A stretch of 63,413 nucleotides of DNA, filler included, from Octopus bimaculoides (Eukaryota), in NCBI RefSeq assembly GCF_001194135.2. It is 6 parts of 6 records of this genome, joined end to end, with 100 filler letters (N's around TTAATTAATTAA, not from the genome) between each part and the next. Parts side by side here need not be neighbours in the genome. Positions count along the whole stretch, not along the records: positions 1 to 29,253 come from NC_068981.1; 5 more parts are not named here. One strand, given 5' to 3'. Positions within the stretch are counted from its first letter, which is position 1; every line of letters starts with the position of its first letter. A program made the position numbers and the translations under genes. This document shows positions 3,152 through 3,453 of this stretch, piece after piece. The notes below the pieces were generated by a model. That model was not told the DNA's origin, did not search any database, and saw only the letters and a list, made by a program, of their open reading frames with translations.

Positions 3152-3282
3152 TTTTCGAAGAATGCTACAGATTCGACCTTCTGGTTTGGTAAAACATATT
3201 GCCAGCTTTGTACGATAGCAGCTTTTTCTTTGACCATCAATCCAGTAGCAGGATCAACATCTTCTTCATCCTTAGCAGGCAT
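3152..3282 (-). CDS. First coding exon of an intracellular globin (myoglobin/neuroglobin-like fold, helices A-B); gene probably continues left of the window
   Basis: Manual translation gives MPAKDEEDVDPATGLMVKEKAAIVQSWQYVLPNQKVESVAFFE+AA. This fits the invertebrate globin pattern D-x-x-TGL-x-x-x-EK-x-x-I-x-x-SW and the B-helix FF-x-K. The exon ends AA|GTAAGC, a phase-2 donor at helix position B12.2, the conserved globin intron site. A strong acceptor CTTTCTTCTTTTCACAG| precedes 3453, so the whole exon is 3453-3152. Confidence 0.85.
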
Positions 3283-3453
3283 GATTCCAAAGTTTCGTAG
3301 TATTGAATCCACAATCCTGAATATTATTCCAACAAATTGGAGTATCTTATTTAAAAGCTTTGGTCTGCCAGTTGAGGCATATACGTTTAGAGAAAGATGT
3401 ATATGTCTATATCTTATTTATTCATTTACTGTTTTCATATATCTGCAAAGTAT
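3283..3453 (-). other. 5' part of the globin exon (5' UTR or N-terminal extension) containing the in-frame uORF MKTVNE* at 3438-3418
   Basis: Lies between the acceptor at 3454 and the ATG at 3282. It has a single in-frame stop (TAA 3420-3418) followed by 45 open codons. Confidence 0.6.

What the first reader, a model, noticed from the sequence alone, without database searches (positions are those of the whole stretch)
3152..3453. Globin exon missed by the ORF track
Seen: a minus-strand exon with a strong acceptor and donor, encoding MPAKDEEDVDPATGLMVKEKAAIVQSWQYVLPNQKVESVAFFEK. Established: globins have Trp at A12 and an intron at B12.2, and both fit exactly. Residue B6, usually Gly, is Ser here and B10 is Phe. 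Cephalopods use haemocyanin in blood, so this would be an intracellular muscle or nerve globin. Inference: later exons lie left of position 1 or in a gap, since I found none in 1-3150.
Basis: partly seen in the sequence, partly recalled or inferred. Interest (0 to 1): 0.7.

Follow-up and report, generated by a model that had tools for sequence, protein, structure and literature searches.

The report
Octopus globin gene, first coding exon

Summary
The peptide MPAKDEEDV...AFFEK is on the minus strand exactly as described. The ATG is at 3282-3280. The exon ends at 3152 and is followed by GTAAGC, which splits a codon after its second base. The 44 residues alone match nothing in Pfam or PDB, and ORF length is no evidence here, because the window holds 151 open stretches at least this long.

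Homology settles the case. The window is 100% identical to the O. bimaculoides chromosome CM046601.1. The peptide equals residues 1-44 of RefSeq XP_014777175.1, "globin-like", 163 aa (Pfam Globin 89.8 bits).

Exons 2 and 3 lie about 5.7 kb and 12 kb left of window position 1. The introns sit at the canonical B12.2 and G7.0 positions.

Two side results go beyond the finding:
- The gene groups with protostome "clade I" globins. A 2020 survey omitted it and stated that Octopus had lost clade I.
- Cuttlefish and Argonauta orthologues start 17 codons upstream with an MGxxxS motif that looks like a myristoylation signal. All three Octopus species have GTT (Val) at that position.

Verdict: the observation and interpretation are correct, the gene is already known, and the interest is low.

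The parts
3152..3282 (-). Coding part of the first coding exon of the O. bimaculoides globin-like gene. It is 131 nt: 43 codons plus the first 2 bases of codon 44. It encodes the pre-A segment, the A helix and the B helix up to B12.
   Evidence: Searches give the sequence. The peptide is identical to residues 1-44 of XP_014777175.1. Splicing this exon to exons 2 and 3 in L011, with GT-AG introns, reproduces the 163-aa protein.
3146..3151 (-). Splice donor GTAAGC of intron 1, phase 2, at globin position B12.2.
   Evidence: One search shows the sequence. The same junction is shown by mRNA against genome in the cuttlefish orthologue, L007 against L008. GTAAG is conserved in Octopus, Argonauta and cuttlefish.
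3283..3333 (-). Seventeen in-frame codons upstream of the ATG (VGIIFRIVDSILRNFGI). They are homologous to the N-terminal extension MGAIFSVIDALIRKIGI of other cephalopod orthologues. GTT (Val, 3333-3331) stands where relatives have the initiator ATG. AGG (Arg, 3318-3316) stands where they have Ser6.
   Evidence: tblastn of P0001 against the window. DNA alignments. All three Octopus species share GTT GGA.
3283..3453 (-). An in-frame TAA at 3420-3418 separates it from any upstream reading frame.
   Evidence: Acceptor heuristic and in-frame translation. By analogy, the cuttlefish coding exon has a transcript-verified acceptor 70 nt upstream of its ATG. This is not verified for Octopus.
1..3151 (-). 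The first 3151 nt of intron 1, which is 8869 nt long in the assembly and contains N gaps. No further globin exon lies in it.
   Evidence: tblastn of a full-length orthologue against the whole window finds only exon 1. Exon 2 maps to L011 19001-19226, which is 5719 nt beyond window position 1.

Best explanation
Window 3152-3282 (minus strand) is the first coding exon of the Octopus bimaculoides 'globin-like' gene (RefSeq XP_014777175.1, chromosome CM046601.1).

Shown:
- The gene has three coding exons of 131, 226 and 135 nt.
- GT-AG introns of about 8.9 kb and 6.1 kb sit at the ancestral globin positions B12.2 and G7.0.
- Exons 2 and 3 lie outside the window, to the left of position 1.
- The product is a 163-residue, all-helical protein with the globin fold.
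- It carries Trp A12, Phe CD1, distal His E7 and proximal His F8.
- It has an acidic N-terminus with no hydrophobic leader.
- By similarity it belongs to the protostome haemoglobin-like ('clade I', HbL) globins. Its nearest solved relative is the hexacoordinate nerve haemoglobin of the clam Spisula.

Inferred: it is an intracellular haem protein, not a blood pigment. It binds haem through His F8 and handles O2, NO or redox chemistry in tissue. It probably rests in a bis-histidyl state like its nearest relatives.

Also inferred: in the genus Octopus the ancestral initiator Met-Gly, which carries the N-myristoylation-type MGxxxS motif, has been replaced by Val-Gly.
For: - Sequence and junction.
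- Exhaustive phmmer search: two hits, E 1.8e-6 and 2.8e-4, both ending or continuing at the same exon boundary.
- Profile search returned XP_014777175.1, whose first 44 residues equal the peptide.
- The window is 100% identical to GCA_001194135.2, down to the N gaps.
- Exon coordinates with GT-AG introns reproduce the protein.
- Pfam Globin scores 89.8 bits, E 2.3e-25, over residues 40-155.
- Alignment with myoglobin and cytoglobin shows invariant Trp A12, Phe CD1, His E7 and His F8, and places the introns at B12.2 and G7.0.
- AlphaFold model: pLDDT 87, eight helices. Foldseek TM-scores are 0.8-0.9 to neuroglobin, Aplysia myoglobin, cytoglobin and Spisula nerve globin.
- The nearest PDB sequence is nerve haemoglobin 8oup, E 1e-15.
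- The same three-exon structure, with a 226-nt exon 2 and a 135-nt exon 3, holds in O. sinensis and Argonauta.
- dN/dS is 0.17 for Octopus against Argonauta and 0.15 between the two decapodiforms.
- The six best BLASTP hits are all clade-one globins, at 85-106 bits. The best hit of any other clade scores 66 bits or less. The NJ tree agrees.
- GTT stands in place of ATG in three Octopus species.
Against: - The 44-residue peptide alone hits nothing in Pfam or PDB. The reason is that the Pfam model starts near residue 40.
The protein is a 'PREDICTED' RefSeq model, and splice junctions are transcript-verified only in the cuttlefish orthologue.
- Within Octopus, dN/dS is 0.52, based on only 22 changes. 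Some relaxation of constraint cannot be excluded.
- The 17 codons upstream of the Met are still open. They are about as similar to the cuttlefish protein (8 of 17 residues) as the rest of the exon is. This is unexpected if they have been untranslated for a long time.
- Haem binding, coordination state, tissue and subcellular location are all untested.
Confidence: 0.93

Rival explanations
1. The true N-terminus in Octopus lies upstream of the reader's Met. The 17-codon extension would still be translated, through an unrecognised upstream exon, an alternative acceptor downstream of the TAA at 3420-3418, or a non-AUG start. On this reading the exon is right but its start, and the RefSeq start, are wrong.
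For: - The frame is open for 45 codons upstream of the ATG.
- The extension keeps 8 of 17 residues of the cuttlefish one, with mostly conservative changes.
- In-frame acceptor-like AGs exist at exon starts 3364 and 3316.
Against: - There is no in-frame ATG between the TAA at 3420-3418 and 3282.
- The best acceptor (3453) lies upstream of that TAA.
- All three differences between O. bimaculoides and O. sinensis in the 17 codons change the amino acid.
- The Ser6 position of the motif is also lost.
- Independent gene models in three Octopus species start at this Met.
- An open run of 45 codons is common in this window.
Confidence: 0.12
2. The Octopus copy is a decaying or non-functional globin gene that lost its ancestral start codon. 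On this reading the exon is a relic rather than part of a working gene.
For: - The ancestral ATG is lost.
- dN/dS within Octopus is 0.52.
- No Octopus transcript-derived protein containing this exon turned up in the Logan-derived protein collection.
Against: - The full 163-codon frame and all six splice sites are intact in O. bimaculoides and O. sinensis. The O. vulgaris gene model keeps the frame to about residue 158.
- All haem-pocket residues are kept.
- dN/dS against Argonauta is 0.17.
- A conserved in-frame Met is present in all cephalopod orthologues. It has the same GGAATCATG context in the three Octopus species and the cuttlefish.
- The exact-match look-ups would miss transcripts whose called ORF starts elsewhere.
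Confidence: 0.05
3. It is a chance open reading frame in non-coding DNA that happens to resemble a globin A helix.
For: - The window has 151 open stretches at least this long.
- The peptide alone gave no hit in Pfam, in PDB or in the word-index search.
Against: - The peptide is exactly identical to the N-terminus of an annotated globin whose other exons lie downstream on the same strand with matching splice phases.
- The exon is conserved with the same boundary in five other cephalopods.
Confidence: 0.01

Closest known systems
RefSeq XP_014777175.1 'globin-like [Octopus bimaculoides]', with orthologues XP_029638454.1 (O. sinensis), CAI9716299.1 (O. vulgaris), GAB1598261.1 (Argonauta hians) and CAE1299789.1 (Acanthosepion pharaonis)
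   Same: It is this gene. Residues 1-44 are identical to the finding's peptide, and the window is 100% identical to the locus.
   Different: Nothing differs for the O. bimaculoides entry. The Argonauta protein and the cuttlefish transcripts start 17 codons earlier with MGxxxS. The A. pharaonis and O. vulgaris gene models have aberrant C-termini.
Protostome haemoglobin-like ('HbL', Song et al. 2020 'clade I') intracellular globins. Examples are Spisula solidissima nerve haemoglobin (PDB 8oup), Lottia Lgi_203115, Lingula Lan_6155 and spider Pte_1009553765.
   Same: - They are the best sequence matches, at 85-106 bits.
- They group with the cephalopod proteins in the NJ tree.
- They share the D-x-x-TGL pre-A motif and Phe B10.
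- Lottia, Lingula and spider share MGxxxS at the N-terminus.
- 8oup is the best PDB sequence hit, with TM-score 0.84-0.91.
   Different: Identity is only about 28-37%. The Octopus proteins lack the MG start. Clade placement rests on a small NJ tree with 72.5% bootstrap, not on a full ML analysis.
N-terminally acylated, membrane-bound globins: vertebrate globin X and the myristoylated HbL globin of the crab Carcinus maenas, as summarised in PMC7457136
   Same: The cuttlefish, second decapodiform and Argonauta orthologues begin MGA(I/L/V)(F/L/V)S. This fits the MGxxxS/T pattern used to predict N-myristoylation.
   Different: The Octopus gene has Val in place of the initiator Met and Arg or Lys in place of Ser6. 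There is no Cys3, so no palmitoylation signal. Globin X itself belongs to another clade, and those clades score 66 bits or less. No acylation was tested.
Vertebrate cytoglobin and neuroglobin
   Same: They share the fold (TM-score 0.8-0.9), His E7 and His F8, and introns at B12.2 and G7.0 (established knowledge for these genes, matched). They are intracellular tissue globins.
   Different: Identity is only 22-28%. Neuroglobin (clade V) and cytoglobin score well below the protostome clade-I proteins. From memory, neuroglobin has a third intron at E11.0 and cytoglobin one at HC2. The Octopus gene has neither.

Membership tests
Globin (Pfam PF00042, 3-on-3 helical globins) | A significant match to the family profile. 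| tested here: met
   The full gene product scores 89.8 bits against a cut-off of 22, E 2.3e-25. The exon-1 peptide alone gives no hit, because the model covers residues 40-155 only.
Globin (Pfam PF00042, 3-on-3 helical globins) | Proximal His F8, plus the conserved Phe CD1. Distal His E7 and Trp A12 are typical. | tested here: met
   In the alignment with myoglobin, cytoglobin and protostome globins the invariant columns are W27, F56, H76 and H108. Trp A12 lies in the window's exon. The other residues lie in exon 2, outside the window.
Globin (Pfam PF00042, 3-on-3 helical globins) | The eight-helix globin fold. | tested here: met
   The AlphaFold2 model has pLDDT 87.3, pTM 0.80 and helices A-H. 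Foldseek finds 541 PDB matches at E <= 0.001. The top 50 are all globins, with TM-scores 0.73-0.91. This is a prediction, not a solved structure.
Globin (Pfam PF00042, 3-on-3 helical globins) | Binds haem and a gaseous ligand. | not testable with these tools
   This needs recombinant protein and spectroscopy.
Animal globin gene structure | Introns at B12.2 (phase 2) and G7.0 (phase 0). | tested here: met
   Exon coordinates with GT-AG introns reproduce the protein. The B12.2 junction is transcript-verified in the cuttlefish.
Bilaterian 'clade I' / HbL globins (Song et al. 2020, PMC7771090) | Closer to labelled clade-I members than to clades II-V or Sp-gb. | tested here: met
   For all four cephalopod proteins, the six best BLASTP hits are clade-one sequences at 80-106 bits. 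The best hit of any other clade scores 66 bits or less.
Bilaterian 'clade I' / HbL globins (Song et al. 2020, PMC7771090) | Monophyly with clade I in a phylogeny. | tested here: inconclusive
   The tree is NJ with BLOSUM62 distances, 29 sequences and 200 bootstraps. The cephalopods are nested among protostome clade-one sequences with 72.5% support, and the cephalopod clade itself has 100%. The sample is small, and no ML or Bayesian analysis was run.
N-myristoylated membrane-bound globins | Initiator Met followed by Gly2, with Ser or Thr at position 6 (MGxxxS/T). | tested here: not met
   O. bimaculoides, O. sinensis and O. vulgaris have GTT GGA (Val-Gly) and Arg or Lys at position 6. The motif is present in Argonauta, cuttlefish and the second decapodiform.
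Neuroglobin (clade V) | Best similarity to neuroglobin-type sequences. | tested here: not met
   Human neuroglobin scores 58-64 bits and Lottia clade five 35-42 bits, against 85-106 bits for clade one. They fall in separate clusters in the NJ tree.

The most novel reading that the evidence does not exclude
The genus Octopus has converted an ancestrally N-myristoylated, membrane-tethered clade-I globin into a soluble one by losing the initiator Met-Gly. The MGxxxS start is conserved in Argonauta, cuttlefish, Lottia, Lingula and spiders. In Octopus, translation would now begin at an internal Met that all cephalopod orthologues keep.

In addition, the published statement that Octopus has lost clade-I globins altogether (PMC7771090) would come from omitting this gene from that survey, not from a real loss.
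Probability: 0.5. Interest if true: 0.3.

Novelty: already known. Interest (0 to 1): 0.15.

Why it matters
For the scan, this is a validated true positive. A reader without tools recognised a 44-residue globin exon from helix landmarks and intron phase, where Pfam and PDB searches on the peptide fail.

Biologically the gene is ordinary and already annotated. Two small points may interest globin specialists.
- Octopus does keep a clade-I (haemoglobin-like) tissue globin, contrary to a statement in the 2020 bilaterian globin survey. That slightly changes the picture of which lineages lost the stem gene of blood globins.
- The Octopus lineage offers a natural contrast for testing what membrane anchoring does for these globins: orthologues with and without the N-terminal acylation motif.

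Tried and rejected
- Pfam hmmscan and PDB phmmer with the 44-aa and 54-aa peptides gave no hits. This is uninformative, because the Pfam model starts at the end of this exon.
- The word-index homologue search with the peptide found nothing. This was a false negative, since XP_014777175.1 is in that database.
- Exact-sequence look-ups of the unspliced 44-aa and 54-aa ORFs found nothing on record.
This is not significant.
- A search for later globin exons inside the window found none. I inspected the three minus-strand frames of 1-3151 and ran tblastn with a full-length orthologue over all 29 kb. The weak hits, such as 25744-25845, contain stop codons and were rejected.
I did not pursue it by other means.
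- Literature searches for the accession numbers and for cephalopod globin papers beyond PMC7771090 found nothing in the held library.
- I considered whether the missing start codon is an assembly error. I rejected this, because three independent Octopus assemblies share GTT GGA.

Full report
**Observation**

On the minus strand the sequence reads ATG (3282-3280) CCT GCT AAG ... TTC GAA AA|GTAAGC.
- The exon's last base is 3152. The GT of the donor is 3151-3150, and the intron interrupts a codon after its second base.
- Read without splicing, the frame stops at TAA (3150-3148). A mechanical ORF list therefore shows only a 54-aa ORF from a GTG, below a usual 60-aa threshold.
- The proposed acceptor (ttttactttcttcttttcacag|A, first exon base 3453) is present. 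By a crude pyrimidine-tract score it is the best acceptor-like site in the 420 nt upstream of the ATG.
- ORF length is no evidence here. The window has 151 N-free open stretches of at least 54 codons.

**First searches**

The peptide alone gave no hit in Pfam, in PDB sequences or in the word-index homologue search. A home-made globin HMM gave an insignificant 5 bits.

An exhaustive phmmer search of 1.84 billion representative proteins gave two hits.
- P0001 is a 91-aa genomic ORF that ends ...HFFNM at the same place, E 1.8e-6.
- P0002 is a 299-aa protein whose residues 2-43 match, E 2.8e-4. It continues LFTDHPDYIDYFPSF...KVHARNVF...GRDHYRRG. P0002 is a Pfam Globin at 75 bits.

**Identification**

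A profile search seeded with these relatives returned XP_014777175.1, 'globin-like [Octopus bimaculoides]', 163 aa.
- Its first 44 residues are identical to the finding's peptide, and it continues LFTTYPEYIDYFPKF.
- The locus of that protein in assembly GCA_001194135.2 (chromosome CM046601.1) is 100% identical to the window, N gaps included. Window 1-13282 equals L011 13282-1.
- One search was therefore a false negative of the word index.

**Gene structure**

Splicing L011 10001-10131, 19001-19226 and 25292-25426, all flanked by GT-AG, reproduces the protein exactly.
- In window terms, exon 1 CDS is 3282-3152.
- Exon 2 begins 5719 nt beyond window position 1, and exon 3 about 12 kb beyond it.
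It also explains why tblastn with a full-length orthologue finds nothing else in the window.
- Intron 1 is 8869 nt and intron 2 is 6065 nt in this gapped assembly.
- Aligned to human myoglobin and cytoglobin, the junctions fall at B12.2 and G7.0.
- O. sinensis and Argonauta hians have the same structure, with identical exon 2 (226 nt) and exon 3 (135 nt) lengths.
- In the cuttlefish orthologue the B12.2 junction, and an acceptor 70 nt upstream of the ATG, are shown directly by comparing an RNA contig (L007) with a genomic contig (L008). The genomic reads are from Acanthosepion esculentum according to bioRxiv 10.1101/2025.04.22.649952.
- The coding exon is therefore not the first exon in the cuttlefish.

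**The protein**

- XP_014777175.1 scores 89.8 bits on Pfam Globin over residues 40-155. This is why exon 1, residues 1-44, is invisible to Pfam.
- Invariant columns in the alignment are Trp A12, Phe B14, Phe CD1, His E7, Val E11, Leu F4 and His F8.
- An AlphaFold2 model (pLDDT 87, pTM 0.80) has eight helices. It superposes on neuroglobin, Aplysia myoglobin, cytoglobin and the Spisula hexacoordinate nerve globin with TM-scores of 0.8-0.9.
- The nearest solved sequence is the Spisula nerve haemoglobin 8oup, E 1e-15, which also has Phe-Phe at B9-B10.
- The N-terminus is acidic, with no hydrophobic leader, so the protein is intracellular.
- dN/dS is 0.17 against Argonauta and 0.15 between the two decapodiforms. 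It is 0.52 between O. bimaculoides and O. sinensis, on only 22 changes.
- I infer a working tissue globin that binds haem through His F8, probably bis-histidyl at rest like its nearest relatives. Haem binding, ligand chemistry and tissue were not testable here.

**Which kind of globin**

I took sequences and clade labels from the supplements of Song et al. 2020 (PMC7771090).
- For all four cephalopod proteins, the six best hits are protostome 'clade one' globins at 80-106 bits. These are Lottia Lgi_231953, Lgi_231954 and Lgi_203115, spider Pte_1009553765, Lingula Lan_6155 and centipede Sma_T1JI21.
- The best member of any other clade scores 66 bits or less.
- A small NJ tree recovers all of Song's clades. 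It nests the cephalopods among protostome clade-one sequences with 72.5% bootstrap, and the cephalopod clade has 100%.
- That paper lists seven O. bimaculoides globins. This gene is not among them.
- The paper states that Octopus has completely lost clade I. On the present evidence that statement reflects an omission.
- This is a rough analysis and needs a proper ML tree.

**The start codon**

- In the cuttlefish mRNA an in-frame stop lies 15 codons upstream of that ATG.
- These fit the MGxxxS/T N-myristoylation pattern that Song et al. flag in Lottia Lgi_203115 (MGLVMSS), Lingula (MGAIWSM) and spider (MGFIFSK) clade-one globins.
- Prothmann et al. 2020 (PMC7457136) regard the motif as ancestral for arthropod HbL globins. 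They cite experimental membrane binding for a crab HbL.
- In the window the homologous codons are still in frame and recognisably similar: VGIIFRIVDSILRNFGI against MGAIFSVIDALIRKIGI. But the initiator is GTT (3333-3331) and position 6 is Arg.
- O. sinensis and O. vulgaris share GTT GGA. This is therefore a real change at genus level and not an assembly error.
- The likeliest reading is that Octopus translates from the conserved internal Met and makes a non-acylated globin.
- The retained similarity of the 17 codons is not fully explained. I give 0.12 to the rival that they are still translated by some route.

**Verdict**

The exon belongs to a gene that RefSeq already annotates, so novelty is 'already known' and interest is low. 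The two side observations, the clade-I omission in the literature and the loss of the acylation start in Octopus, are modest and need transcript, protein and phylogenetic follow-up.

Noticed in passing
Literature against XP_014777175.1 (window 3152-3282 and L011): Song et al. 2020 (PMC7771090) list seven O. bimaculoides globins without this one, and state that Octopus lost clade I. BLASTP and a small NJ tree place this gene and its cephalopod orthologues inside their protostome clade one.
   Followed up: partly
Window 3283-3333 (minus); L013 and L014 at the same place; L012 5001; L007 316: Cuttlefish, a second decapodiform and Argonauta start the protein 17 codons upstream with MGxxxS, a motif of the N-myristoylation type. 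All three Octopus species have GTT (Val) at that Met and Arg or Lys at Ser6, yet the 17 codons remain open and similar.
   Followed up: partly
Window about 100-414, plus strand: An open frame (...LDQSKAFDRV...) weakly matches the reverse-transcriptase family RVT_1 (25 bits, below the 29.6 cut-off, E 1.8e-5). It is probably a decayed non-LTR retrotransposon fragment inside globin intron 1.
   Followed up: partly
Window 26977-27156 and 29074-29253: An exact 180-nt direct duplicate lies 2097 nt apart. The first copy directly follows an N gap and the second runs to the end of the piece, so it may be a scaffolding artefact or a recent duplication. A related copy lies in globin intron 2 (L011 19943-20270, 91%).
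   Followed up: no
Window 6657-6898 and 15653-15932; L011 15837-16124: A dispersed repeat of about 240-280 nt at 95-97% identity is present twice in the window in opposite orientation. It is also present in globin intron 1 outside the window. It is probably a young SINE-like element.
   Followed up: no
Window 3018-3110 and many other places; 13 N gaps within the piece: (CA)n and other microsatellites directly follow the exon's donor region. About 3.9 kb of the piece is N, including gaps at 1746-1802 and 2620-2690 inside intron 1, so intron lengths are estimates.
   Followed up: no
P0002 (Acanthosepion pharaonis CAE1299789.1) and P0010 (Octopus vulgaris CAI9716299.1): Both deposited gene models leave the conserved sequence within the last helix and run into low-complexity tails, giving 299 aa and 192 aa against 199 and 163. 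Their last exon or stop is probably mis-predicted.
   Followed up: no
Tool behaviour: The word-index homologue search reported no candidate for the 44-aa peptide, although a protein with exactly these 44 residues is in that database. Short queries can be false negatives there.
   Followed up: yes
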